Part shown: positions 3,060 through 60,526 of the stretch, piece after piece
Position numbering within the stretch: the first letter of the stretch is position 1
Layout of the letters: every line of letters starts with the position of its first letter
Position numbers and translations under genes: made by a program
The notes under the pieces: generated by a model
What the model saw: only the letters and a program-made list of their open reading frames with translations
What the model was told of the DNA's origin: nothing
Databases searched by the model: none
Source of the DNA: Dicyema japonicum
Taxonomy: Eukaryota > Animalia > Dicyemida
Direction of reading: 5' to 3'
Length of the DNA stretch: 64,000 bases
Assembly (NCBI GenBank): GCA_011109175.1
Contig: RDEW01000091.1
Coordinates: 2,169 to 66,168, forward strand

Positions 3060-3395
3060 TAATATACATGTTTCTCATATGCATGCGCCTCGTGGAAACC
3101 ATCCATATCTTGGACAAATATGAAGAAAATTGAGGAAATGCAAAAGAAGGCTTACAGAGTAACGGAGCGTTGGATTTGTGAAGATCACCGAACCGGACCT
3201 ACGCCTCTGGAAGCCCTTATAAGACTATACTCCAGATCACGGGAAAGTGGTCCTGAAAATTCAGGCGGCCGTCCTGTACGTTCATGCGCGGGCACGAAGA
3301 AAGAACACCGGGTAAAAATGAGGTATCTGTTAGAATGCATCGGGATCACGTGATAATTAATTTGGTTTTACCGTGGTCTTGGGTTAAATAAATTA
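3060..3395 (+). mobile_element. 5'-truncated LINE 3' end (same family as 26300-27880)
   Basis: Clearly homologous to 27545-27880 (MKKIEEMQKKAYRV.ERWICEDHR.GPTPLEAL). Ends IGIT* followed by the terminal stem-loop and an A-rich tail. Confidence 0.9.
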
Positions 3396-4152: not shown

Positions 4153-4480
4153 TTAGAAATTAACATCGTTAAGATTAATTAGACTGGGTAAAACCCCTTG
4201 TATCCGTGCAATCAACTTACTGCATCGTACCGCACTTATGCTTTTCATTAATTCTTCTATAATTTTTTCCAGTACACGCAAATGATATTCAGTATTTGTA
4301 AGCGTAGACGTAGTCTCATGAGATAAAATTTCCGACATTTTTGTAGATAATTCTCGTTTAACTTCGGATTTTAAAATTGCCCATACACCTTCTATCGGAT
4401 TTAACATTGGACTATATGGTGCTAATCGCAAAATTAGATTTCTGTTTATTTCTGGATCTTGTAAAATATAATTTTTTAGG
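4153..4480 (-). mobile_element. Tc1/mariner (IS630-like) DDE transposase fragment
   Basis: LILRLAPYSPMLNPIEGVWAILKSEVK is the canonical P.YSP.LNPIE..W..LK motif. Truncated at about 4480 where the CRE-like element begins. Confidence 0.85.
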
Positions 4481-6690
4481 CCATTGTGGCAGGTCACTCT
4501 CAGGCGGACCACGCAATCCAACCGCTGATACTTACAAGATTCTATTGGAGAAGCATCCACCCTCTCCGAATGAATTACGCCACTGTTCATCCCCATCAAA
4601 AGTGACCCCTTTGTCCACGTCGCCTGAGGATGTCATCACGGCGTTATGGAACTTTGCACCAAGCAGCAGTGGAGGTCTCGATGGCTTAAGGCCTGGCCAT
4701 CTTAAGGACCTTATTTCACCGACTATTAGAGACCAAGCATGTCGTCTCCTTCTCACTCACTTCTCTTATGAACAGGATATTATCCGGACATTTGCCTGAT
4801 TTGATACGTCACATCTTGTTTTCGGCTAGTCTGATTGCGTCGACAAGAAGGGAGGTGGTATCCGACTGATCGCGGTCAGATTCACCTTCAGAGACTAGGT
4901 TCCAAGATTGCTTCCAGATTTTCTACGTCAATTTTATCAAAATCCTTACTTCCCAGTCAAGTTGGAGTCGGAGTTCGTCTTGGATGTGAGGCAGCCGTTC
5001 ACTTTTTCAGACATTCAGGAACCGCAACATTCAAGACTTTAAAAGGAACATTATGGTAAAGCTGGACATCAAGAACGCTTTTAACAGTTTAAGAAGAGAC
5101 TGCATTCTGGAGGCCTGCAAAGAAAGATGTCCAAACATATTTGAACTGGTCAATTATTCATATGGAAAACCTCATCTCTATTGAACGGGGATTTCATGAT
5201 TCCATCGTCCTCGGGTGTTCAACAGGGCGACCCCCTCGGACCACTGCTGTTCTCCCTCGGCATTGAGAGGATCACGAAGCTCTCTAGATGCCCACTCAAC
5301 ATCTGGTACCTCGATGACGCTGTCCTAGGAGGTCCCCGGAAACGGTCTTCCAGGACTTAGAAGTACTCATCCCGCGTTGTCCGAGGTGGGTCTTCAGTTG
5401 AATATAACGAAATGTGAAATAACAAACTGTGGTCTTGCTGACGATGACTTCTCTTCAATTGTTCAAAAATTTTACTCCTTGTTTCCGGTGGGATTTCGAC
5501 CCCTGAAAATGAATTGATTTTTCTTGGATCCCCGATCACTAGAATGCGATGAAGCATGTCCTCCTTGACAAAAAACGACTCCTATGCGAATCGCTGGAAG
5601 ATTACAGCTGCTGACTCACACTCAGCACTATTCCTATGAAAAGAAGTCTTAACATTCAGAGAATCGCCTATTTACTCAGGACAGCCCGTACTATTCCAAT
5701 TGGAGCAGCTTGAGCTTCGATTTGTCTTTCCTCAGCTCGATGAAGCAAATATTTAATGTCAAATTCGACGATGCTACATGGAAGCGAGCTACACTCCCAG
5801 TTAGATTTGGGGGTCTTGGAATCCGTCGTACTTTGGACGTCTCACTTCCTGTACATCTGTCTTCACTCACGGCCTGCGAACGTTTGGTCAAGAGGATTCT
5901 ACACTCCCTACCCAAATTCTCAATTGACCAAGATATAATCCACGCACGAGAAGCATGGAATGCCACCAACCTCCCCCTGCGTCCTTCACAAGACTGCCAG
6001 CGAAACCTAGACAATTTATTGTGCTGGAAATCATTTGGACTCTACTGGAATCTGCCAATCAGCACTGAGGCGCTTGTTTTGCTTTTCAGGGGCTGGGACT
6101 GAAAGTATGTGTACCTCACCCGTGCCGATGTGGTGTCGTGATAGACTGCTATGGCCTGCACCCTCGTTTGCAAAGAGGATCGCTGGCAGAACTCCAAGAC
6201 ACAGGGCTCTGAATGAAATTGCCAAACAGGCTATGGATGCTGCTGGATACTCGGTCATTCTCGAACAGGTCGGGTTATGCAAAAGTGACAGAAACGACCG
6301 GACGGGATGACCATATTTCTTTTTGTGGCCGGGAAACCACTTGTTTGGAACGTGACATATACAGATACGTTCGCCTCAAAAAATCTTCAAGAGTGCGTAT
6401 CAAGAGCCTGTTCTGCAGCCTTCAAGACGGAGAAGGCCAAACTCGAAAAATACGGCGACCTTCCGATAATGTCCGATTTGTTCCCGTTTGCTATGAGACT
6501 TCCGGATCCTACTCCCCCTCTACATTATAGTTTTTCAGACGTCTTGGAAACCGGATCACCTCATGCACTGGAGATCTCCGCGAACGCCGCTGGCTGTTTG
6601 AGCGAATTTCGCTCGCAATTCTGAGAGGGAACAACCATGCAGTGAGAGCGGCAGCTAACTAATGTTTTGTCCTTATCATTTTATTAATAA
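4480..6690 (+). mobile_element. CRE-like non-LTR retrotransposon (RT + CCHC + restriction-like endonuclease), frameshifted
   Basis: Motifs in order: SSGGLDGLRPGHLKD; QVGVGVRLGCEAAVH; KLDIKNAFNSL; GVQQGDPLGPLLF; WYLDD; LPVRFGGLGIR; GRTPRHRALNEIAKQAM; DGMT..GKPLVWNVT..DTFA; FERISLAILRGN. Confidence 0.9.
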
Positions 6691-6839: not shown

Positions 6840-9558
6840 CAGAGTTCCCAACTTGGGTTCCGCGAAGTTCCAAAAATTTTTTTAATTTTTTTTCAAAAAA
6901 ATAATTATTCAAACTAATTAATTTAATTTGCGCGTGTCTAAATGGAGTCTTGTGATAGTGCATTTCTTAAAGTTAGATCGTATCGAGAAAGTTACATGCC
7001 TTTGGTTTCACATGAACAGGGAACATGGATTGCCCTTTACCACTTTGTGTTGTTTGCCGGTGAAAAATTTGCGAATAGTGCTATGCTCAAACGAAACTTA
7101 GACGTCATTTCTCAGGAAACTTCCAAAGAAAAAAATAATATTTTATGCGGAAATGTACCAGAATAAAGTTCAAGCATCCCTTTTTTACAAAAAAAATTCA
7201 AAATAAACGAAAAATGCACTGCATGCTAGTTATGCTGTTGCTGAGATTTCCGTTAAAAATATGAAATCGCATACTCTCGCCGAAACTGTTATTTTGCCTG
7301 CATGCAAAGTAGTGAAGATAATGTTCGGAGAATTGCTGCCGCTGAGCTCGACTTAATTCCTATGAAATTAAAAACCACTTTGGTTTTGCGTTTCAAGTGG
7401 ATGTAAGCTCAGATATTACAGGAAGAATGCAACTCCTTGTTTTCGTGCGATATATGAACGATGAATCAATTGTTGAAGATTTTCTTTGCTGCAAAGAGTT
7501 GCTCGGAACAACAAACGGATATGACATTTTCAATCTTATAAATTCATATTTTGAGGATATAAAGTTGGATTAGAATGTATGTGTGGGTATCTGCACTGAT
7601 GGTTCCTCAGGAATGACTGGGCAAGTTAAAGGCTTTGTTTCTATTGCGAATAATAAGAATCCGAACATTATTCACACACTGTTTTCTTCATCGCGAGGCA
7701 TTGGTCGCAAAAAAACTATTGGACATGGCTGTAAAAATAATTAATTACATCAAAATGAGGCCGTTGACATTGCGACATTTCTCGAAACTTTGTGAAAATA
7801 CAGAACATTCAGTTTTGATTTTGCACACTGAAGTAAGATGGCTCTCAAAGGGAAACATGTTAATTCATTTGTATCAACTAAGACACGAATTGTTGGCTTT
7901 TTGTATACAAGAGAAGTTGGGTGACTTTATTGAATGCCTCAATGGTGAATGTTGGTGTTGCAAATTAGCATACCTCGCCGAGATTTTTAGCGAACTCAAT
8001 GTTCTCAATAGCAGCATGCAAGGGAGAAATGAAAATCTATTTAGTTGCGCGGACAAAATAGCTGCTTTTCTGAAAAAACTAAAAATATATGGAAACAACA
8101 CATCACGAATGGAAACTTGGAAATGTTCCCTCATGTACAAGAAAGAAATTGTTCCACAAATCGTAGACCATTTGGAGTCACTATTTACATGTACGAATAA
8201 TTATTTTCTATCCATATCAGTTGAAATCTATGATTGGGTGAGGAATCCTTTTGCAGAGTACAAAATAACTGGAAACGAGCTATCATTAAAAGAGAAAGAA
8301 GAACTTGCGTTTGTTTCAAGTTACAGAACGTTAAAAATGGAATATTTACGTATAAAAGAATATCCTATTCTGGCAAACAAAGCTTTAAGAGTTTTGGTCC
8401 ACTTTTCAACGACTTATTTTTGTGGAAGTGGATTTTCTGCATTAACTAATATAAAGAATAAAAAACGCGCGAAACTACTGTATGTTTTTTAATTCTTTTT
8501 CAAGGCCAAATATTACAGAGCTCGAAAACCCCGATTTTTAAAGAATATTAATCTGAATGAATTACCTGTTATTTACTTCTCCAACGTTACAGCCTGGATG
8601 ACATCGAAATTGTTTTCAAAATGGTTGCAACATGTGAACATGCAGATGATGCGCCAAAAACGAAAAATTATTATGTTTTTGGATAATGCAGCATCACATT
8701 CACCAAACTTAAATATTCCAACGTGGAACTCAAATTTCTTCCAGCTAACACAACGAGTGTCATACAGCCTCTGGATCAAGGAATTATTTGGTCATTTAAA
8801 GAAAGATACAGAAGACTACTAATGACTCAACTTCTTGCCAAAATGGACACAGAAACCAATGGGACACCACTTGCAAAAAATTTCTCTCTTGTATGCTATC
8901 CGGTGGATTAGCTCAGCTTTATAAGGGTGGCATTCCAGTCAAAATATATGATATTAACAACAATCCCGAAAACAATTTACTGTTCATACCCCTCATGAAT
9001 AGACTAGTCGATAATCCAATGACAGAAAAAGAATTTGTCAACATAGACTTGGAACTACCCACTGAAAATCCCAAAGATTGGGAATCATCCATAGTTGAAC
9101 AATACCAAACAGTCTCAGCTTCTGATGATAATGACAGTGACTCAGATTCTGATAAGCAAACAGAGCCAAAACATATAGAGAAATTAACACGCACAAATGT
9201 TCAACAAATGCTAGACCAAATCTGCCACTTTGCTTGCACTCAAGACCCTGCATTACTCGATCCCGTCAACAGACTGATCTATCTGAACAATAAAGCGATT
9301 GCTGAATCGAAGCTAAATACGAGGCAATCCTTATTGACAGATTTCTATTAATTTTACTGTTTCACTTTTTCGTTATAAGTAAATTTAATGACTTGTTCAA
9401 TACACCGGCCTTCCCTCTATACCGGACAATTCTGTCGGTCCCGAGAGGAATCGGTTTAGAGGGGTTTGACTGTAGTTGTTAAAAATTATATAAGGGTTTC
9501 GTTTAAAATGAAAAATGTAGATAGGGTTCCGTGCTCTCAAAAAAATTGGGAACCACTG
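6840..9558 (+). mobile_element. hAT (Buster/ZBED5-like) DNA transposon with decayed transposase
   Basis: 8-bp TSD GTCTAGAC at 6832-6839 and 9559-9566. TIRs CAGAGTTCCCAA / TTGGGAACCACTG. Transposase motifs ICTDG, HCFLHREAL, HTEVRWLSKG, LAYLAEIF..LN.LN..MQG, FSTTY.C.SGFSAL. Confidence 0.92.
8480..9472 (+). mobile_element. pogo/Tigger transposon (DDE_1) nested in the hAT element, 5'-truncated
   Basis: AWMTSKLF..W, MFLDNAASH, FLPANTTSVIQPLDQGII..FK..YR. 3' terminus ...AGAGGGGTTTGACTG followed by TA. Confidence 0.88.
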
Positions 9559-22898: not shown

Positions 22899-24268
22899 TT
22901 TTATTTATTTATTTTTATTTTAATAACCCCGGGAACACCGAGAAAGAAAGACAAAAGAGTCATACAGTTAGGTGATCCCAGTCCTCGCAATCACTTGTGC
23001 CATTCGACGTCTGTGATCTCCATCGTCCCCACTACTTTCCGGAAGAGCCTTCTCTCGGTCTTGCAAGGAATCCGATCGGGGAGGGGAATTTCTTATCCAA
23101 TCGGTTTTCTCTTGCCATGGGAAGGATCAGGCGAAGCGGATTTCCATCTTCTTCACAGACGCGAAGAAATCCGGAGCCACGACTACGGATCTTAGCTTCC
23201 ATGAGTAGTGGGTCGACTGTTGATCCATTACGTGGGCAAAGCATACTGATTGTTTTCCGGTGTATCGAGTTGATTCTTTGGACCATAGACTCCGATAGCC
23301 CGAATCTCCATGCAATGGAGGCATACTCAATGGCAGGCGCGATTGTTTGTTGGTAGAGGTAGAAACGGAAAAGTCCATGTTCCTCGTGGTCCTCCGAACA
23401 AGGGCGCGTATAACGTTAACTTTCTGGAGGCCCCTGGTGATCATGTCTGTTGCGTGGGAGTTGAAATTGAGAAGGCTGTCGTACTTGACTCCAAGGACAG
23501 TGGGGGACTTGTCACTGGAATCCGAGTGGGACCAATGAAAAGACTCAGTTCATCCTTGGAACGACGGTCCGACGTGAATGTGGAACAGATAGACTTGGTT
23601 GCAGAAATCGTTAGTCGATTGCCAACAATCCAATCGTGGAGAATGTTCAATTTTGTCTGAGTTTTAAGGGATGCGACTTGCGTCGAGCGGTTCCGTATTG
23701 CAATGACTCTATCGTCTGCGTAGGATAATAGCAGGGAATCTTCGTCTCCATCATTAGGTAGGTCGTGTAGGAATAGGTTGAATAGAATTGGTGAAATTGG
23801 AGACCCCTGGGGTACCCCGTTCGGTAGTAATCGTGATCTAGATCTGAGATCATCACTGACTACTCTTCCACGTCTTCCAGACAAAAAGTTGGCCAGCCAT
23901 AATTTACATTCGGACGAAGATTAGTAGAAAATATTTTTCCAACCAGGATTTTCCTCGAAACAGTGTCAAAGGCTTTGTTGATGTCAATAGAAACCAAGAT
24001 TGTGCGTTTGTGAGGCGGGGATGGGTGTTAAAACCGTCGGCAATGAACTGCGATAGTTGCCAAGTATGTAGCGGTGGACCTACCGCGGAGGAAACCATGT
24101 TGAAATATAGGACGTGGAAGATACGGAATAATGACTGATAATACAAGTTTCTCCATAATTTTTGACAGTGTGCTGGTAACGGAAATAGGCCTGTAGGAGG
24201 CAGGTTCTGTCTCTGGTTTCCCAGCCTTCAATATCGGTCTGATGATAGAATTCTTCCAAATCTTGGAA
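22899..24268 (-). mobile_element. 5'-truncated APE-RT-type LINE with TSD
   Basis: SYRPISVTSTLSKIMEKLVL, FQHGF, LPNGVPQGSPISPILFNLFL, SYADD. Ends RTGIT* plus stem-loop and (AAAT)n. TSD TTTGATTTTAT at 22888-22898 and 24269-24279. Confidence 0.93.
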
Positions 24269-26299: not shown

Positions 26300-27880
26300 A
26301 TTCGAAATGTGGCAAAAGGCGATGAAGTTTCAACAGAGGAGGATTATGTTCAAAGTGATGTGAACAACTTAATAAAATTCTATACTAAAATTTTACACAA
26401 GGAGCACATGAAGTCTGATACACTATCATCACGCAGGAAACTAGAGAGAATATCAGAACCACTTTTCTTTTTTGAGAGAGGTACAAGCGACATTCCGTAA
26501 AAACGACATACTCCCACAAACCAGACAACATTCCTATTATCTTATTAAAAAATCTTGGAGACGGAATAGTCACTTTTCTAACATCGATTTTCAACTTTTC
26601 GATTAATCAGAATGTGATACCGTTGTTATGGAAACAGGCTCTAATATGGCCAGTACTGAAACCAGGAAGACCGAGAGATGACCCAGCGTCTTTTAAACCG
26701 GTGTCACTGCTATGTTCAATGTCAAAAATTCTGGAGAGGCTTGTGCTCGGGAGAATAAAAGAATTATTACCAGAGAGGCCTTTTCAACATGGATTCAAAA
26801 ATGAGAGATCTTCATACTTGCAAACATTGACCGACTTCATTCGAGTCGGATTCACAACCAAGCCGAGACACTTTAAAACAGTGATCTGCTCGATCGACAT
26901 ACATAAGGCTTTTGACTCAGTCTCGAAAAAGATTTTATCGAAAAAAATATTTCAATCGGAGATCCCAGGGAAACTAAAACTTTGGATTATTAACTTTCTA
27001 AGTGGACGAAGGGGACGTGTTTGCTTCGGAGGTCTGAAATCAATCTCACGGCTCCTCCCAAACGGAGTCCCTCAAGGATCGCCTTTATCCCCTGCTCTGT
27101 TTAACCGCTTTCTGGATGATATCTCGAGTCTTGAATCTGATAATGATGTTCTACTTTCCTATGCGGATAGTATTGTGTTGGCTTCGCGAGATCAGGACAT
27201 CCAGAAGGCCACAGAAAGAATACAAATTAACTGGACAGGCTTAATGCCTGGATAATGGAAAAGCAGCTCGTGGTGAATGCAGAGAAGTCGTCTACATCAC
27301 TATTTACCTCTGACAAAAGATTGGGAAGAAAGACAGTCACCTTGAAGTTAAACAAGGTCGGCATCCCTTTCCACAGTTGTTAAAGGATCTTGGGTGTGAC
27401 AATTGATGTGCATCTCTGTTTAACACCTCACGTAGAAAACATTCTATTAAAATGCGAGAAGAAACTGAACGTATTGAAAAGTTTATTGGGAATATGGAAG
27501 AGTGATACTCACCCAGTTTGATGAACGTATACAAACAATACATCGAGCCATGTTTCTCATATGCATGCGCCTCGTAGGGACCGTTCATATCTTGGACAAA
27601 TATGAGGAAAATTGAGGAAATGCAAAAGAGGGCTTACAGAGTAATGGAGCGTTGGATTTGTGAAGATCATCGACCCGGACCTACGCCTCTGGAGGCCCTT
27701 ATGAAACTAGACTCCAGATCACGGGAAGTTGGCCCTGAAAATTCAGGCAGCCTGTTCGTTCATGCGCAGGCACGAAGGAAGAACACAGGGCAAAGATGAG
27801 GTCTCTGTTAGAATGCATCGGGATCACGTGATAATTACTTTTGTTTTACCGTGGTCATAGGTTAAATAAAAAAATAAATA
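26300..27880 (+). mobile_element. 5'-truncated APE-RT-type LINE
   Basis: PDNIP..LLKNL, WKQALIWPVLKPG, FKPVSLLCSMSKILERLV, FQHGF, DIHKAFDSV, GVPQGSPLSP, SYADS. 3' end IGIT* plus stem-loop and A-rich tail. Confidence 0.93.
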
Positions 27881-30900: not shown

Positions 30901-31559
30901 AGAATGGGCGGTGGGATTTTTAATTATTGATTTTTAAAAATTTTTTAGATGAGTCACTATTGACTTATCTAAGTTGTGGCTATCAAACAATTCTTATGTG
31001 TCAGGTAGAAGTTCGTTAAACAGCTGATGTTAAATAAAACTGGAAAGGCGATGTTTCCTTAACAAAAAATTATTTTGTCGACATTCCATTAGAAAATCTA
31101 CTATCGACAGCGACATTCCATTAGAAAATCGCTATATAGCGATGTTTGGAAAAGGTTTTACAGAATTTTTTAAAATAATTATGCCTTGAAATAATTTGGT
31201 TTTCTCCATTTGGAATCGGGATGTCAGGTAAGTTAAAAAGTAGCGGGGAAAGTGGTGAACCTTGAGGTACTCCATTAGGAAATAGTCTAGAGACTGGTTG
31301 AATGTTTCCGAGACATACTCTCCTCTACATCCGCCAAGAAAGTTAGCAAGTTATAATTTGAAATTCCCGGAATATCTGTCTGGAATATTTTCAAATTAAG
31401 AGTTTGAAATTCTCGGAATGTCTGTCTGGAATATACTTCCTGAGAATGGAGTCGAAGGCTTTACATATATACACTTTCATAGAACGGTCTTCTGATGTAT
31501 TGGTTTGTTGAAGAAGCCAGGGTGAATAAAGTTGCTCAAGGTTGATCGGTCTTTTTTAA

Positions 31560-33858
31560 CTCAAACATCAATTATGGTATGAAGGCCAGAAACCAGACAG
31601 TAGAGGAAACCTACTGGCAAGAAACTTGGGACAATTTTGTATATTGAATAACACCATAAACAATACAAGAACACCTACTCGAAAAGGAGACAAACCTACA
31701 TCCTCTGACCTCTCCTTATGTTCCCCATCAATGTTTCCCCTCGTCAAATGGACTGTAAAATATGAACTAAGAAGTGATCACAACCCTATTATGATGAAAA
31801 TCAACACTGCAAATAAATTTATCAGACAGAATTCCACTTTTTTAAATTTTGAAAGCGCAGATTTGTCCAACTTCTCTAATTACATCGACACCAATATGGA
31901 AGTATTTTACACATTGGTATTCTCATCAATTGACCACATGATCAAAACTTTCACGGACATTATACTCAAAGCAAGAAAACTATTTATTCCAATGGGATGC
32001 CATCAAACAAGGAATACCTATTATAATATGCACACAAAAACACTTATCAGAGAAAGAAATAAATTAAAGAAGCAAAAGGAATTATCAAATGACGATTTCC
32101 AAAAAATGAAATCTTTGAAAATACAAATTAAACAAGTTACCCAGTCTAGAATCAAGAAGCGATGGACATCACTTATTGATTCTCTATCGCCAAATACATC
32201 CGAGACGCTGATATGGAGAAAATTAAATATTTGAGACGTTGCAATGAAGGCTCTGAGAAAGTCCTTTACGGACAGGGATGTAGCAACATCGACCCAAATA
32301 TTTTAATGAAGCACTATGTCGCGATCAGCCATAAAAATTTCTCGAGGGAACACAGAATCTACAAGAAGAAGTTGTATCCATCATATGATTTGATTGTCTT
32401 TACTCCACAAGAAGTTCGAAACGAAATCATGGATGCCAAAAACTCCCGTTCCCGAGGCTGACAATGTCTCGATGATGGAACTGAAACACCTTGGTGAAAA
32501 AGCAACCAAATTCTTATCACGTTTATACTATATCTGTGAACAATAATATGATACCTTCTATATGGAAGAAATCTATAATTCTGCCAATTCGGAAGCCAAA
32601 CAAACCTGCAAATGATCCCTCTTCTTATCGTCCAATTGCAATATGTCCCAAATTTTAGAAAAATTAATCTTAACACGAATCAAAAATATTGTACCAAATC
32701 GAGTATTCCAGCATGGATTCCGTGAAAATCATTCTACTACGACTCACTTAACAAAATTAACTCAATATATTTCTGATGGATTCTCTTATCCAAAACCACA
32801 TAAAAGGACCATAATGGCTTTAATAGACTTGAAGAAAGCATTCGACTCCGTCTCCCGGACGCTGCTTATAGAGAAAATTTCTAACACTCTTATAAATCCA
32901 AACATTAAAAGATGGTTGTCGAACTTTTTAAGTGGAAGAAGAGGACAAGTGATGTTAGACAACAGAAAATCTATATCCCGTTTATTGCCGAATGGTGTCC
33001 CTCAAGGTTCACCTCTCTCTCCCCTGCTCTTCAACTGTACACCAATGACCTTCCCACCAACGACGATCCCGATACATTAATACTCTCATACGCAGATGAC
33101 ATTGTTCTTTCAACGAGAGACTCTAACTATGAGAAGGCAGATAAAACTTCAAAGTTATATTAATATGCTGGAAAATTGGCTCACATCAAATCGACTGGAA
33201 GTTTCTACAGGAAAGTCGTTTATAACAATTTTCTCTACATATAGAAGATCATTATACTCTCCCAAAATCAAATTGTTTGATATGAAATTCCTATGAATAA
33301 GTCTCCAACAATACTAGGATTAAAGTTGGATACTCTCCTGACATTCGGCCAACATGTCAATGACGTTATTACCAAAGTCAGGAGGAGGACCAACATATTG
33401 AAAATTTTTCCCGATCACCAATCGAGCACAACACCTTCTTACTACAGAAAATTTACAGACAATACATACTGCCAGTAATCGAATACGCATGTCTCTCCTG
33501 GAGCTCGATGATTTCTGAATCGTCGTCTCAAAAATTAGAAGCCGCACAACTTGCTACTTTAAAATAATAAATAAGAAAACTGTGGATAACGTATTGAATG
33601 TTAAAGAACACCTAAAGTGGAGAGTGAAGTCATTTCTACAGTGGGCAATGAAAACCGGCTGTCCGCTTTCACTCTCTATATCTGACTATCTAGAAAATAC
33701 GGGAAATCTATGGAGAATGAGACCGTCCACGTTTCTACCAATTCTGTTGGATCTTCGAGGACCCCGAACGAGAGCCAGAACCCGGAAAACCGGGATCACT
33801 TAGTTAGTAGTTAACTTTTAACTTTTTCTAATCCGGTGATCTTGGGGTAAAAAAAAAA
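31560..33858 (+). mobile_element. LINE ORF2: APE endonuclease C-terminal half + RT + short C-terminus, frameshifted
   Basis: DSRGNLL, PTR..SDLSLCS..W.V..LRSDHNPI (APE); YRPI, FQHGF, DLKKAFDSV, GVPQGSPLSP, SYADD, ILGLKLDTLLTF. Ends KTGIT* plus stem-loop and poly(A). Confidence 0.93.
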
Positions 33859-34469: not shown

Positions 34470-35016
34470 CGCTACCTTATATGTCATACCTAACTATTCG
34501 GAGCAATCATATACCGCCAGACAATCCCGGGTGTGGAATATGCCTCTGCTGTGTGAAGATTCGCGTTATCAGATGCCACTATCCAAGAACTAAACTAACT
34601 GCAAAAAAAACAATACGTATGCTGGGACCACAATGTGGAACAAAAATACCTCCTTTGCTGACGGAATCTACAACTCGTAGATTTGGTTACGGATTTCTCG
34701 CATTTTCGAGGAACATGGACACCCACTAAGCCTCTCACTGTTCCACGAAAAAGAAAATCGGTTGGCTAAGAAATATCCGTGCAAGGATCAAAGAAGGTGT
34801 ACCTTAAGGAAAAACCGAAAATCTGTTGGCTAAAAAATTTCCCCAGTCGGCTTCCTATGCAAGGATCAAAGAAGGCATTTCCGTTCGACAGTGGGAACAA
34901 TGGAGACGCACAAGCTTCGTTCGGATGGCACGTTTGGTTGCGGGAACTGAGATCACCTAACTAGTTGACTTTACTTTTGTATTTCTTTCCCGGTGATCCC
35001 GGGGTTAATAAATAAA
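34470..35016 (+). mobile_element. LINE 3' fragment (22899-24268 family)
   Basis: AIIYRQTIP..EYASA and KENRL.K..PSRL resemble 23000-23350 (-). Ends ACT GAG ATC ACC TAA...CGGTGATCCCGGGGTT(AAAT)n. Confidence 0.85.
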
Positions 35017-39849: not shown

Positions 39850-40145
39850 CCTTGGTTATACAAGGTAGTGGTACAAGATTTTCTTCGACGACCCCACAGG
39901 AGAGGAGCTATATGGGACACCATCACCTCTCCATGCCTGCGGGATTGGGAGCTACAACACATTAAGTGAACAATACTATCACGTGGGTGAATTATGCGCC
40001 ATTTTTCAAAAAAGTTAGTTGTGATATTATTCAGGTTTCCAAGACCAACCGCAGAAGAGAGCCTGTTATGGACACGGGGATCGTTTAATTTCGACAATAA
40101 CTCTTATCCTCTTTTGTGGTTCCGGTGTTGATAAATTAAAATTAA
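39850..40145 (+). mobile_element. Degenerate LINE 3' end
   Basis: Ends ..RRREPVMDTGIV* with stem CACGGGGATCG / TGGTTCCGGTG and an AT-rich tail. Confidence 0.55.
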
Positions 40146-41139: not shown

Positions 41140-41920
41140 TAAAAAGAATGTTCCCACTTCGAGGAAAAAGGTACCAGCCAAGTCATCTGAGATGTTTTCG
41201 TCCTGTCGGCTTGTCAGAACTCGGAAGCGTGGGATCTCCTGCTCTGCTTGTGGAGATTTCTTCCACCTCGGGTGTATCAAGCTATCCCAAGCTGAGCGAG
41301 CGTGCTTGGAGTATGGAACTGCCAGTCATGCCTCGGCCTATGCACTGAGGTTCCCCGTGCCTGCGCCATTGTTAACTCTCTCATTAATTAGAGAGGCCTA
41401 CACCCTCTCACCTGCAGGAAGAGTGCAGGCAGATTTCCCAGACACATAACCTTGAACGAAGTCGTTAGGCAAGCTTTGGACGACGCCGGATACCCCTACA
41501 TGCTCGAGCCAGTCGGTCTTTGCAGGCTGGACAGGTGGGATGACAATCTTCCTTTTTGAAGCCGGGAAACCACTTGTCTGGGACGTCACATGCACCGACA
41601 CGTTTACCTCTTGCAACCTACTCCATTATGCCTCTGGAGCCTGTTTTGCCGCTGAGAAGGCCGAGAATTTAAAACGGGAAAAGTACGGGGTCATACCCAA
41701 AAATTTTTTGTTTGTTCCACTCGCCGTTGAGACGTCTTGTTCCCTTGCGGCTGCGACGCTAGAATTCTTGAGTCGTCAAGGGAATCGGACCGCTACACAA
41801 TCAAGAAACCCTCGTGAGCGCTGCTGGTTATTTGAGCATATCTCGATCAGGGAATAGCCACGCAGTCAGGGCATTTGCTATAAAACCATTTACTTTCTTT
41901 TCTTTCCATTAATAAAATGA
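41140..41920 (+). mobile_element. Internally deleted CRE-like element: PHD finger joined to the CCHC/RLE domain
   Basis: SCRLVRTRKRGISCSACGDFFHLGC...WNCQSC (PHD), then [56 protein letters not shown]. No RT in between. Confidence 0.8.
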
Positions 41921-42082: not shown

Positions 42083-45622
<3,540 letters not shown>

Positions 45623-45689: not shown

Positions 45690-46335
45690 TTATATTTATT
45701 TTGCGCTAACTGTTGGAATTATTATTAGCACTTTCAAGAGAGCATGTGCAGCAAAAAGGACAAGAGAAAGAGTTAGGTTATTATAGGCTTTTCTGTTGTT
45801 AGCCAGATCCCTCAATGTGTCCAGGTCATTAGCAAATTCTAGTGTCTTCTTTGTGCCTTTCAGATCGCCTTCTAAAACAACCGGAGGGTTGTTCTTGGTC
45901 TTCCACGAAAGCGTTTTACATGGAAAGTAGTAATCTTCCATGGCAATATTCGAGGAGATGTAGGGTCCAACATCAGGACGTGTCCAAAAAGTCTCCAACG
46001 AAAGCTTATGATCTCGAGATTTAGAGGTATACAGTCACAAATATTGTACAATCCTTTCCGCGAGATCTTGGATGGCCAGGACATTCAAGTTATGTTTCTT
46101 AGAAGATTTCTGTGAAATGAGTCTAGTCTCTCCAATTCCTCTTTTGAGGTGGCCCAGGGCCCAGAGTTGTATAGGAGGATTGGTTTGATAAAGGTGTCGT
46201 ACAACATTATCCTTTGTTTTATGTTAATCCCTTTTCGTTTTAGCCATAGGTTTTTCAGCCTGTGTAATGCCGCGTTTGCCATGGTTTTTCTCCGTATGAT
46301 ATCTCCATCATCTCCAAATAGGGAGCCAAGTTTTG
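45690..46335 (-). mobile_element. RTE-like LINE 3' part
   Basis: LGSLFGDDGDIIRRKTMANAA, LYDTFIKPILLYN..W, LDSFHR..LR, RWRLFGHVL, RGRPRTTL. Confidence 0.85.
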
Positions 46336-49300
46336 AGTAGGGCTGCGTACGATGTCTCCGTAGACGACTAACTCTCAAGTAGCTAGACTTCTCAGTAGAG
46401 AGTCTCATCCCTCTTTTGGAGCACCAATCTTGGTCAATAAATAACTTGATTCTTCTTTCCGATAGAGTTGACTTCCCGACGTATCCGTAATCAGAATGTC
46501 ATTACGGATATTATTAGTTTGGTGTTCGCATCCGGCAGAGTGGGGAAGTCAGACAGAAACACATTGAACAGAAGCGGGCTCAAGACAGAGCCTGTGGAAC
46601 GCACCTTTTTAATAGGATATCTTTTGACATATTTGTCCCAACACGTACTCGGGAAGTACGTCCTGTTAAGAAGTCTTTTATCATGTGAAGAGTTTCTTTT
46701 ATATGTTAGCAGCCGCTAGCCTTGATAAGAGGGCTTCATGGCACACGCTATCGAAGGCCTTAGACAGGTCCAAACATACCAGGTTGTCTTGCCTCTTGAA
46801 TTCCAGGCCTCTCAGTACCTTTCGAATGCATGTGATGGATACAATCCGAGCAGGATTTCTGGGTCTGAAGACACATTGTTCCGCGAGGAGGAAACAGCTC
46901 TCTTCTATGTGTTCGTTTAGTCTCTTGAAGATAATTCTCTCAGTAATCTTGGAGATAGAGCAGATTAGGCTGATTGGCCAATAGTTAAGGGGGTCTCTCC
47001 CCGACTTTCCTGGTTTAAGAATCATCCTGACAATATAGATTTTCCAGCGTCTTGGGATATATTCATAATCAATGCTTGCGTCGAACAAGTTCTTCAGCAC
47101 GAGCAGCAGATCCTCTGAATTTTCCTGGAACATTCTCATGCTAATGTGGTCATGTCCAGTGGCGTTAGCTTTGCATGCTCTAATGGAAATCACGACGTCC
47201 TCTGTCGTTATCTTCATATCAGAATCTTTGAGATCGTCCGGGGAATAAGTAATAAGTTCTTTTGATGCTCTCAACTCTTCCCTCGGTATGAGCTCTGTTG
47301 GGTTGACTCCCTGGATACTGTCTAGTTGCTTCTTAAAGATATCTGGGACTTTTTCGATAGAATATGATCTACCTTCCGGTTTGTTCAGAGAGATTTCATT
47401 TCATTCTCTTCTAGCCTGTTATTATTTTGTAGATCTTTCAGAACGAAGGGTCTTTGGTGTTTAGTTTGCTTGCTTCGACCTTCCAACATTGTTCTATTGC
47501 CAGTCTTGTTCCTTCTTAAATGGCTTTTTTTGATTATCTTTAGTTGACCAGTCAATGTAATCCGGTCCATCCAGTCGATACATCTTCTGAGTTTGTTCCT
47601 CAGTCGGTTTCTTTCTTTAATCATAGATAGCGTAGAAGGGGAGAAATTAATGCTTTTCTTATATAATTGGTTCCGAGACTCTCCCTTCTGGCGTAAAGTG
47701 ATAAGTATCTCTTTAATCACAATTGAAATTTCTTTGTCTATGTTGTCAATATCAATTCGGGAATAGGTCCTCCTTAAGTTTTTAAGGTTTCTAGATATGT
47801 ATCTTCTATAGTGTTACCAAATTAGTCTTGATAGGTCGTAGCCTATGTGAGCACTGACTCCGTAGTGTCCGGACCAGGTTCAGTGATATCTCTTGATGGA
47901 TGTGGTCGCTCCGATGTTTCACATGATCATCGGTCTCTCCACATAAGTGTAGAGCAGTGGTGACACCAGGAACCCCAAGCATGTCTCCACCGTAGTACGA
48001 GAAGTGATTCGGCTTTTCCGACGTCAATAATCTCGAAGCCAGTCTTATCAATTAATTTTCTTTGCCTGGTTCGCTCGGTGGTTCGGCAGCGATCGATATA
48101 CCATTTAATGTTCTTGGCGTTTAGATTTCCCTAGGACAGACATATCGTTTCCTGCGAAGAATTTTCAATTTGTGGAGCACTTTCTAAGGTCCTTTGAATA
48201 CAATCTCCAATGTGTATCCAACGGCCACATCATCGCACCTTGACGGAAACAAATTCACAATGTGTATTCACAATAACTTCTGGCTCATATCTGTAGAACA
48301 TCACTATAGAATAATGTGGTTCCAGTACCAGCTTCTGCACCTTCGACCCATGGTATTTCTATAGAATTATATCCCTGTAGTATTGTAGTGTTGGTCTTTT
48401 TCACCTTGGTCTCGTTGATCACCAGGATGTCAATCTTGGTTGACGACAGGTAGTGCCAGATCATAACGCTTCTTCCTCAGGGATCGGGCGTTCACCAGCA
48501 CTATCTTCAGGTTTTTTTCAATTTTCTTTTTGGTGGCCGGACTCCCATGGCCAGGTCCACCATTCTTCGTAAATCCACCCCGAGTGTGCCGCTTAGTTCC
48601 TTTAGTCTTGATATTATTTCCTCCAGGTCTTTTGCAATTCTCCCTGGTATCTTTTCCCTGGTGGCCAGGCCGATTCTCGTGGATGAGGAGGTGGTTCATT
48701 CTTGTTAGTCCTTAGGCCAATTATTCTCTTTTGAGCTGGTGGTTCCACTTTGTTAGTTATAAAATTCATCTGTTTCGGTTCCGTATTGTTGATTCGGGGA
48801 CTTAGCTTTCGCCTGGCCTCCACAAGCACAGAACATCCTCCATATCTTGCACCATGTTTTGTTGATCCGCAGTGAACGCACTTAGGTTCAAGACCCGGAT
48901 CCGCATTGCACCTGGAGGTGTCATGCTCTCCCGCGCAAAGAAAGCATTTCTTCTTTCCAGTGCACTGGTATACAAAGTGACCGACCTGCTGACAGTTGTA
49001 GCATATTGGCGGTCTTCTTCTCATCCACTCACAGGAGATCTTGTTCGTTCCAACGTAGAAGTCACAGCGTATTAGTGATGTGGCCTCCGATTAACAATTA
49101 ATCGAGGCCTTCGCCATTGGCATGGGCTGCGATCCTCTGGATATCTGGGTAACTTTTGTAGCTGAGGAAGCCATTTCCTGGAGGTAGTCCAAGAAGTCGT
49201 CCTCCTTCACCCAGAAAAGTAGGTTGCTGAGGACAATCTCAGACGATTTTGTTGAAAGTGTTTTGAATCGGTGGTTGTCCACGGCCTCTATATAGGTGGC

Positions 49301-49640
49301 CATGTGGGAGTTGTCTTGGAAATCCAGTCCGAAAGAGCCCGGTTCTTTGTGGCTCATCTTCATATATCCTTACTGGTATATGTAAAACGTTTGCAATCTT
49401 TATCGCACTCATAGTAGATTCGACTGTGATCAATAGAGTCCGGTTGTCTATAAGATCAGCTTTCATTGGTTCGTCTGTAGGTTTGGCCACTTCCGTGGAG
49501 TCGTGTTTTGTAAGATCATTTGCAGGTTTAGCAGGTTCTGCCTTATTCGAGAATCTCATTGAAAAAACCATGGTGTTGACATCCAACGAGGAAGATGTCG
49601 GATCCCCCATTCCACACCACATTTTACAGGCAACACGATA
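46335..49640 (-). mobile_element. Two-ORF LINE (gag-like ORF1 with zinc knuckles + APE-RT ORF2), Jockey/I-group-like
   Basis: ORF1: CYNCQQVGHFVYQC, CFLCAGEHDTSRC, CVHCGSTKHGA..GC. ORF2: VNARSL, SDH (APE), YWPISLICSISKITERII, LDLSKAFDSVCH, GSVLSPLLFNVF. Confidence 0.9.
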
Positions 49641-50290
49641 CTTTATTCGTGATACAACAGTAGACTTTCGGTACCTCCTTCAAATACGGTATTTGCTTTA
49701 TCAACTCTTACCGACAATACATGGACAAATCCAGTGTCCTTTAAAAATATCGGGTCTTGAATTCCCTCTTCATAACAAAGATTTTTTAAGGATTCTAGAA
49801 AAAGTAGTCATTGATACAATTTCTGGTTCTGATGACCCCTACAGGAATATCGGTAGCTCTCCCTTATCTTGGTTTTTAAGGAACTGAAAATCTGACCTCA
49901 TTGTGAATTTTGAGATTTTCTTTTATCTAAAAATATATTTACCCTTATCCTACTGATAATGAGTAGAAAGTGACGCTAATGGTCGGGAAACCCTATAACT
50001 CTATTTCCGTAAAAAACATTAGCGATCAACTATACTCTCATGACTTGCACGTAATGAATTCTCAACAAAATGACTTCGAAATAGAATTTCTCATTTTTTC
50101 AACCGTCATTCAAACAAGAGAATTTTTTGTAAATTTAGTCTTTTCTTCTCGAGGATCGAAATAATTAACTTGATCCGTCGGAAAAAAAAGCGGCACATCA
50201 ATCGAAGGCAAGACCCGACTATTATTCTAAGCGAGGAGAGAACGTAGAGTGAAGCGGCAAAACGGTAACTCCTCTTCTTATGGGGGAATG

Positions 50291-58640: not shown

Positions 58641-60526
<1,886 letters not shown>

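What the first reader, a model, noticed from the sequence alone, without database searches (positions are those of the whole stretch)
33789..33858. Covarying 3'-terminal RNA stem-loop built from the last ORF2 codons (G-I-T-stop), shared by many divergent LINE families
Seen in sequence: copies end as follows. 3340(+) GGG ATC ACG TGA..CGTGGTCTTGGGTT; 27818(+) same family; 33789(+) GGG ATC ACT TAG..GGTGATCTTGGGGT; 34946(+) GAG ATC ACC TAA..GGTGATCCCGGGGTT; 22982(-) GGG ATC ACC TAA..GGTGTTCCCGGGGTT; 50369(-) GGG ATC ACC TAA..GGTGATTCTGG; 61579(-) GGG ATC ACT TAG..AGTGATCCTCGGGGT; 36912(-) GGG ATC ACC TGA..GGTGTTTCTTTGG. Weaker versions occur at about 14775, 28835(-), 40072 and 63712(-). The Thr wobble base covaries with its partner (C:G, T:A, G:C, T:G). 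The stop codon is the first part of a variable, often U-rich loop of about 20-40 nt, and the stem is followed by an (AAT/AAAT)n or poly(A) tail. The upstream C-terminal protein sequences differ greatly between families. Established: 'stringent' LINEs (e.g. eel UnaL2) recognise their RNA through a 3' stem-loop. Inference: the GIT peptide is a by-product of an RNA constraint. Placing the stem across the stop codon could couple translation termination to cis-capture of the RNA by the nascent RT. I do not know of this architecture being described.
Basis: partly seen in the sequence, partly recalled or inferred. Interest (0 to 1): 0.8.

Follow-up and report, generated by a model that had tools for sequence, protein, structure and literature searches.

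The report
LINE tail hairpin overlapping last codons
One lineage of jumping genes (LINEs) in a tiny octopus parasite ends in an RNA hairpin whose first arm is also the last codons of the protein (Gly-Ile-Thr, then stop); it is a well-supported but compact variant of the known 3' signal by which a LINE enzyme finds the RNA it copies.

Summary
Observation confirmed. The 33.8-kb copy and seven others in the window end in a 9-11 bp stem (5' arm = codons G-I-T, then a stop, a 19-38 nt loop, 3' arm, A-rich tail); 1,458 genome matches against 1 control. The genome matches Dicyema japonicum (67.5 Mb, 377 scaffolds). In 36 subfamily representatives 96.6% of cells pair. Double changes fall only on synonymous sites (Thr wobble: C:G, G:C, U:A, A:U; Gly wobble: G:C to A:U) and arose several times independently on the tree. 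Intact 991-1025 aa ORFs end in this frame. Corrections: carriers are one clade of Vingi-like, RNase H-less, CCHC-less LINEs, not unrelated families; the C-terminal helix is conserved as protein; G-I-T looks doubly constrained rather than a pure by-product; 28835 is not a copy. Best reading: a stringent-type 3' recognition hairpin pushed into the ORF by a very short 3' UTR, which the closest relatives also have. Coupling to translation termination is plausible but untested. This scan already reported the same motif in at least five other windows of this genome.

The parts
33790..33800 (+). 5' arm of the terminal stem; 33792-33800 are the last three codons (Gly, Ile, Thr) of the LINE ORF
   Evidence: in frame with the RT thumb in intact relatives L063, L075, L081
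33801..33803 (+). TAG stop codon at the top of the stem, start of the loop
   Evidence: TAA, TAG and TGA alternate between subfamilies
33804..33834 (+). Variable U-rich loop; in this copy it folds into a weak, unconserved upper stem
33835..33845 (+). 3' arm of the stem (11 bp with the 5' arm; U:G at the Thr wobble position)
33849..33858 (+). A10 tail (other subfamilies: AAT or AAAT repeats)
31542..33803 (+). Decayed Vingi-like LINE body (AP endonuclease about 31542-32219, RT about 32460-33400, thumb about 33454) that carries the hairpin; on one of the deepest branches of the clade
3342..3380 (+). Same hairpin, subfamily with G:C wobble pair and TGA
27820..27858 (+). Same subfamily as 3342, ending a longer RT copy (26476-27831)
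34949..35000 (+). Hairpin copy, C:G pair, TAA; GAG here is a copy-level mutation (sister copies have GGG)
22931..22979 (-). Hairpin copy, C:G pair, TAA, U-U mismatch at position 5; same subfamily as the long-ORF copy L082
36867..36908 (-). Hairpin copy, C:G pair, TGA; same subfamily as intact L081
50316..50366 (-). Hairpin copy, C:G pair, TAA
61521..61576 (-). Hairpin copy, U:A pair, TAG; a 135-aa open frame runs from the thumb to G-I-T-stop
40077..40123 (+). Decayed hairpin copy of a subfamily with a U-U mismatch at the wobble position

Best explanation
The hairpin plus A-rich tail is the 3' cis-signal of one dicyemid lineage of compact, single-ORF Vingi-like LINEs (AP endonuclease + RT, no RNase H, no CCHC knuckle). 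After translation, the element's protein binds the stem (shared by all subfamilies) and probably the loop (subfamily-specific), and starts target-primed reverse transcription at the adjacent tail, as shown for eel UnaL2 and zebrafish ZfL2. The 3' UTR is only about 35-55 nt, so the 5' arm lies in the last codons. Those bases carry two constraints: pairing in the RNA and a helix-capping G-I-T end in the protein. Shown here: structure, covariation, frame, single clade, terminal position. Inferred: binding by the ORF protein, need for retrotransposition, loop-based specificity.
For: 9-bp consensus stem predicted without input: 96.6% paired, 13 double-changed cells, 0/500 shuffles, slid controls 36-55%. 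Independent compensations on the tree: C:G to U:A between sister subfamilies, C:G to G:C, and G:Y to A:U twice. A subfamily of roughly 30 copies has A:U, while sporadic ACA mutants of other subfamilies keep the old, now broken partner. The terminal Gly uses only GGG/GGA (15/2), whereas a Gly 17 codons upstream uses all four codons. [quoted passage not shown] Copies are 5'-truncated to 60-900 nt but keep hairpin and tail. An internally deleted copy joins the 5' end of the LINE 2-3 nt before the 5' arm and is flanked by a 9-bp duplication. Stem-general, loop-specific recognition is published for L2 (PMC4176376). The closest outside relatives have 18-50 nt 3' UTRs.
Against: No binding or retrotransposition data, and no RNA run holds the sequence. 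Only two of nine pairs show double changes, and the sequences are related, so the shuffle counts are not probabilities. Some subfamilies tolerate U-U mismatches at position 5 (6/36) or at the wobble pair (1/36). Motif-selected loci were also selected for ending in the motif; the RT-selected loci L031-L082 remove this bias only partly.
Confidence: 0.8

Rival explanations
1. Termination-coupled capture (an addition to the best reading). A ribosome stopped on this codon covers the 5' arm, so the stem can refold only on release. The just-made protein then captures it, which gives cis-preference and a switch from translation to reverse transcription. Selection therefore fixes the stop at the top of the stem.
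For: The stop stays in exact register after the ninth stem base in all subfamilies while switching among TAA, TAG and TGA at least six times. No subfamily has moved it; sense changes at its first base are sporadic (66 copies). Upstream C-terminal length varies by internal indels (253-284 aa after the PQG motif), but the end does not.
Against: A fixed stop is equally explained by a fixed protein C-terminus (conserved terminal helix) plus descent from one ancestor. Published L2 hairpins work from the 3' UTR and in trans. No functional data.
Confidence: 0.2
2. G-I-T is purely a by-product of the RNA constraint and the protein does not need it.
For: An E-I-T subfamily keeps pairing through A:U. 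A very small G-V-T group exists. Synonymous freedom is lost at the Gly and Ile wobble sites. No significant profile match of the terminal peptide to relatives (hhalign probability under 1%).
Against: All double changes are synonymous. U5 (Ile second base) is invariant although its partner varies among A, G and U. Thr first and second bases never change at subfamily level. The terminal helix is conserved at codon positions 1-2 more than 3 and is predicted with pLDDT about 80. About ten CCHC-bearing relatives end in a similar F/Y-x4-G-hydrophobic helix cap (by eye only).
Confidence: 0.15
3. The stem has another RNA role (3'-end formation, stability, or stop-codon readthrough) rather than recognition by the RT.
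For: It sits at the transcript end next to an AATAAA-like tail, and hairpins near stop codons can promote readthrough (general knowledge).
Against: Several subfamilies have a second in-frame stop right after the first (TGA TAA, TGA TAG), and the loop has no conserved frame or length, which argues against readthrough. The position matches the known stringent-type signal.
Confidence: 0.1
4. No selected structure: shared ancestry alone produces the apparent pairing.
For: All carriers are one clade.
Against: Repeated independent double changes, loops that share no sequence between arms that still pair, and the contrast between compensated subfamily changes and uncompensated copy mutations.
Confidence: 0.03

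Closest known systems
Stringent-type LINE 3' tail stem-loops (eel UnaL2, zebrafish ZfL2-1 and ZfL2-2; PMC4176376, PMC3747384, PMC5135761)
   Same: Terminal stem-loop directly followed by a short-repeat tail; conserved stem with compensatory changes; loop differing between families, as in the published model of general stem recognition plus specific loop recognition.
   Different: In those elements the hairpin lies inside the 3' UTR. Here the 5' arm is coding and the stop codon opens the loop. Different clade (I-group, Vingi-like rather than L2). No functional test here.
Vingi clade non-LTR retrotransposons (Kojima et al. 2011, cited in PMC13708176 and PMC3708506)
   Same: Compact single ORF of about 1,000 aa with AP endonuclease and RT, no RNase H; internally deleted two-part derivatives; the nearest database relatives have the same domain set and very short 3' UTRs.
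   Different: The dicyemid ORFs are 110-150 aa shorter after the RT and lack the C-terminal CCHC knuckle found in the nearest relatives. They carry an N-terminal 2A-like motif, which PMC3708506 did not find in Vingi. No named Vingi sequence was available for the tree.
Amniote CR1 3' end (hairpin plus octamer repeat; PMC4316615)
   Same: Short conserved 3' end with hairpin and microsatellite proposed as the RT recognition site.
   Different: Described as 3' UTR. From memory the CR1 hairpin lies very close to the ORF2 end, but I did not test whether it overlaps the stop. Unrelated sequence.

Membership tests
Stringent-type LINE 3' tail | Stem-loop at the extreme 3' end followed by a simple-repeat tail | tested here: met
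Stringent-type LINE 3' tail | Structure kept through compensatory changes between families | tested here: met
Stringent-type LINE 3' tail | Located within the 3' UTR (as described for UnaL2, ZfL2, SART1) | tested here: not met
   The 5' arm is the last three codons; intact ORFs end in it. This is the variant feature.
Stringent-type LINE 3' tail | Tail shared with non-autonomous partners (SINE or two-part element) | tested here: inconclusive
   One clear two-part copy (L004) and two probable ones; no tRNA-headed SINE found in the loci checked. Earlier scan notes claim SINE partners; I did not verify them.
Stringent-type LINE 3' tail | Required for retrotransposition and bound by the ORF2 endonuclease-RT linker | not testable with these tools
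   needs a reporter assay and a binding assay
Vingi clade | Single ORF of about 1,000 aa with AP endonuclease and RT | tested here: met
   991 and 1025 aa; Pfam Exo_endo_phos and RVT_1
Vingi clade | No RNase H domain | tested here: met
   only 253-284 aa follow the PQG motif
Vingi clade | RT phylogeny grouping with named Vingi elements | tested here: inconclusive
   Groups at SH-aLRT 99 with unnamed RNase H-less, CCHC-ended proteins. Calling these Vingi-like rests on my knowledge of the clade; no named reference was in the tree and only the quick tree finished.
Vingi clade | C-terminal CCHC zinc knuckle (present in the nearest relatives; typical of the clade from memory) | tested here: not met
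   absent from all dicyemid ORFs, present in P0002, P0004-P0012 and P0014; hence filed only as Vingi-like
Ingi clade | RNase H domain after the RT | tested here: not met
Ingi clade | 2A-like motif upstream of the endonuclease | tested here: met
   DVEQNPGP in L081, degenerate in L082; activity not tested
Any Rfam RNA family | Match at gathering threshold | tested here: not met
   0 matches in the window

The most novel reading that the evidence does not exclude
The stop codon is held at the top of the recognition stem because the terminating ribosome keeps the stem open and its release lets it refold next to the finished protein. This would be a built-in switch from translation to reverse transcription that enforces cis-preference, possibly with the arginine-rich terminal helix replacing the lost CCHC knuckle as an RNA contact, and possibly general to Vingi-like LINEs with very short 3' UTRs.
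Probability: 0.2. Interest if true: 0.7.

Novelty: new variant of a known kind. Interest (0 to 1): 0.36.

Why it matters
It is an unusually clean natural data set for LINE template recognition: dozens of subfamilies with one stem, many loops and a record of compensatory changes. That makes the published stem-general, loop-specific model testable outside the L2 clade. It shows the signal can be written over coding sequence in one of the most compact LINE designs seen here (2.85-3.2 kb, no RNase H, no zinc knuckle). Vingi elements are being developed as RNA gene-insertion tools (PMC13708176). If their recognition element begins inside the ORF, donor RNAs built from the annotated 3' UTR alone would lack one arm of the stem. 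If termination coupling were shown, it would give a mechanism for cis-preference in stringent LINEs.

Tried and rejected
Convergence among unrelated families: rejected by the tree; the RTE-type element at about 45.7-47.4 kb (-) has no such end. A conserved upper stem or a paired stop codon: individual folds differ and the consensus has only the 9-bp stem. Homology of G-I-T to the R-I-G motif before the zinc knuckle of I-group LINEs: register ambiguous and not significant. Homology to the final helix of relatives: suggestive by eye, not significant. Rfam: nothing. Fold search: only L1, R2 and other RTs. Literature searches for a LINE stem overlapping the stop codon, or for dicyemid LINEs, found no description; the original Vingi paper was not held. 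No RNA runs were found. The large protein search was not used. The careful tree did not finish; quick trees are reported. L038p3158 is chimeric in the first tree and was dropped from the second. No target-site duplication was found for the 33.8-kb copy.

Full report
Source. The window's genome has 67,542,437 bases in 377 contigs. This matches the published Dicyema japonicum assembly (67.5 Mb, 377 scaffolds, 49% repeats; PMC6736024), a dicyemid parasite of octopus. That paper mentions LINE ORF2 copies but does not describe them.

Observation. At the finding the sequence reads: 5' arm 33790-33800, stop TAG 33801-33803, a 31-nt loop, 3' arm 33835-33845, then ten A's. It folds as an 11-bp stem, z = -2.1. 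A strict pattern gives 7 window hits against 0.01 in shuffles and 1,458 genome hits against 1 for the reversed pattern. Of the weak copies, 40077 is a decayed true copy, 14780 and 63708 are very decayed, and 28835 is a copy broken off before the motif.

Frame. Loci chosen by RT similarity, not by the motif, show that ORFs open from the RT to the end stop exactly at G-I-T (L063, L075, L081, L037; L082 has G-I-I by a copy mutation). L081 and L082 are single ORFs of 991 and 1025 aa with AP endonuclease and RT, a 2A-like motif before the endonuclease, and no RNase H.

One clade. The best outside relatives (33-41% identity) are RNase H-less proteins ending in a CCHC knuckle, which I read as Vingi-like from knowledge of the clade and from PMC13708176. 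In a tree of RT plus thumb, with the terminal residues trimmed from most rows, all 26 carriers form one branch (SH-aLRT 99) inside that group (quick tree, the careful search did not finish). They have lost 110-150 aa including the knuckle. Three copies on an Octopus sinensis contig carry the same end, and the two that could be placed nest within the clade; the contig is probably dicyemid DNA. The RTE-like element in the window lacks the motif.

RNA constraint. For 36 subfamily representatives RNAalifold predicts only the 9-bp stem. 96.6% of cells pair, 13 are double changes, no shuffle of 500 reaches this, and slid controls pair 36-55%. Because the rows are related I counted events on a tree. 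The Thr wobble pair changes eight times, including C:G to U:A between sister subfamilies and C:G to G:C. The Gly wobble pair becomes A:U in at least two separate branches. A subfamily of roughly 30 copies has A:U at the Thr wobble, whereas scattered ACA mutants of other subfamilies keep their old, now mismatched partner: changes that define active lineages are compensated, and post-insertion mutations are not. The terminal Gly uses only GGG or GGA, while a conserved Gly 17 codons upstream uses all four codons. [quoted passage not shown] The loop (19-38 nt including the stop) has no shared sequence or upper stem.

Protein constraint. Every double change is synonymous. Subfamily-level changes in the 5' arm are GGG to GGA, ATC to ATT and ACN, plus one E-I-T subfamily that keeps pairing and at most a tiny G-V-T group. 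Changes at the second base of Ile and the first two of Thr appear only as scattered mutants, although U5 faces A, G or U in different subfamilies. The preceding 20 residues form a conserved basic helix with variation mainly at third positions. AlphaFold predicts a helix at 429-443 of 446, followed by G-I, at pLDDT about 80. About ten relatives end in a similar F/Y-x4-G-hydrophobic cap, but profile alignment was not significant. G-I-T is therefore best read as doubly constrained; base-specific RNA recognition of the invariant core cannot be separated from protein need without experiments. The stop switches among TAA, TAG and TGA at least six times and never becomes sense in a subfamily, so it is selected as a stop.

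Mechanism. Copies are 5'-truncated to as little as 60 nt but keep hairpin and tail, and a two-part copy joins the LINE 5' end 2-3 nt before the 5' arm. This is the anatomy of stringent-type LINEs, where the ORF2 linker binds the stem generally and the loop specifically (PMC4176376; PMC5135761). I infer the same role here (0.8). The overlap with the ORF needs no special cause: the 3' UTR is only 35-55 nt, and the nearest outside relatives also have 18-50 nt UTRs, some folding across their stop. A terminating ribosome must hold the 5' arm open, so the stem can form only after release. Readthrough is unlikely because second stops follow directly in several subfamilies.

Novelty. No Rfam family matches, and my literature searches found no LINE recognition stem described as overlapping the stop codon, nor any account of dicyemid LINEs; the library lacks many subscription papers, including the original Vingi report. 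The function class is well known; the coding overlap is the variant. This scan has reported the same motif from at least five other windows of this genome; those notes agree with what I tested and are not independent support. Verdict: real, selected, a new variant of a known kind; interest 0.36.

Noticed in passing
L081:674-3649 (-), L082:1287-4364 (+): A 2A-like (stop-go) motif lies just upstream of the endonuclease in these RNase H-less elements, intact in L081 and degenerate in L082. PMC3708506 found none in Vingi. One outside relative (P0004) has it too.
   Followed up: partly
L081, L082, L075 C-termini: The dicyemid lineage has lost 110-150 aa after the RT thumb, including the CCHC knuckle, and ends in an arginine-rich helix. 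One full-length subfamily is only about 2.85 kb.
   Followed up: partly
L083 (GCA_006345805.1, VCDQ01001777.1): A 483-kb contig of the Octopus sinensis assembly carries three copies of the motif, and the two that could be placed nest inside the dicyemid clade (82% protein identity to L081). It is probably dicyemid contamination. Its 'importin alpha-3-like' gene model (P0001) is fused to a LINE RT fragment.
   Followed up: partly
L084-L089 3' ends: Outside Vingi-like relatives have 18-50 nt 3' UTRs before AAC, AGA or A tails, and several fold over their stop codon in single-sequence predictions; not tested by covariation.
   Followed up: partly
L004:1478-1665 (-): Two-part short element: 125 nt of LINE 5' end joined directly to the hairpin, with a 9-bp flanking duplication; two similar loci on contig C179.
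   Followed up: partly
L009/L010 and L093: Tandem duplications of 3' ends, including a partial duplication of the hairpin itself, suggest slippage or re-initiation during reverse transcription.
   Followed up: no
window 45700-49100 (-): RTE-like LINE fragment without the hairpin, and upstream a zinc-knuckle (zf-CCHC) ORF at 48617-49090.
   Followed up: partly
window 4156-6099, 41456-41854, 49242-49884: Fragments that look like restriction-endonuclease-type (CRE/NeSL-like) retrotransposons; judged from motifs only.
   Followed up: no
window 7617-8489 (+): 291-aa open frame resembling a hAT-type transposase C-terminus (from memory).
   Followed up: no
window 44238-45100 (+) and 59443-59874 (-): Exons resembling a PRP16-like DEAH helicase and a Polo-like kinase (from memory).
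   Followed up: no
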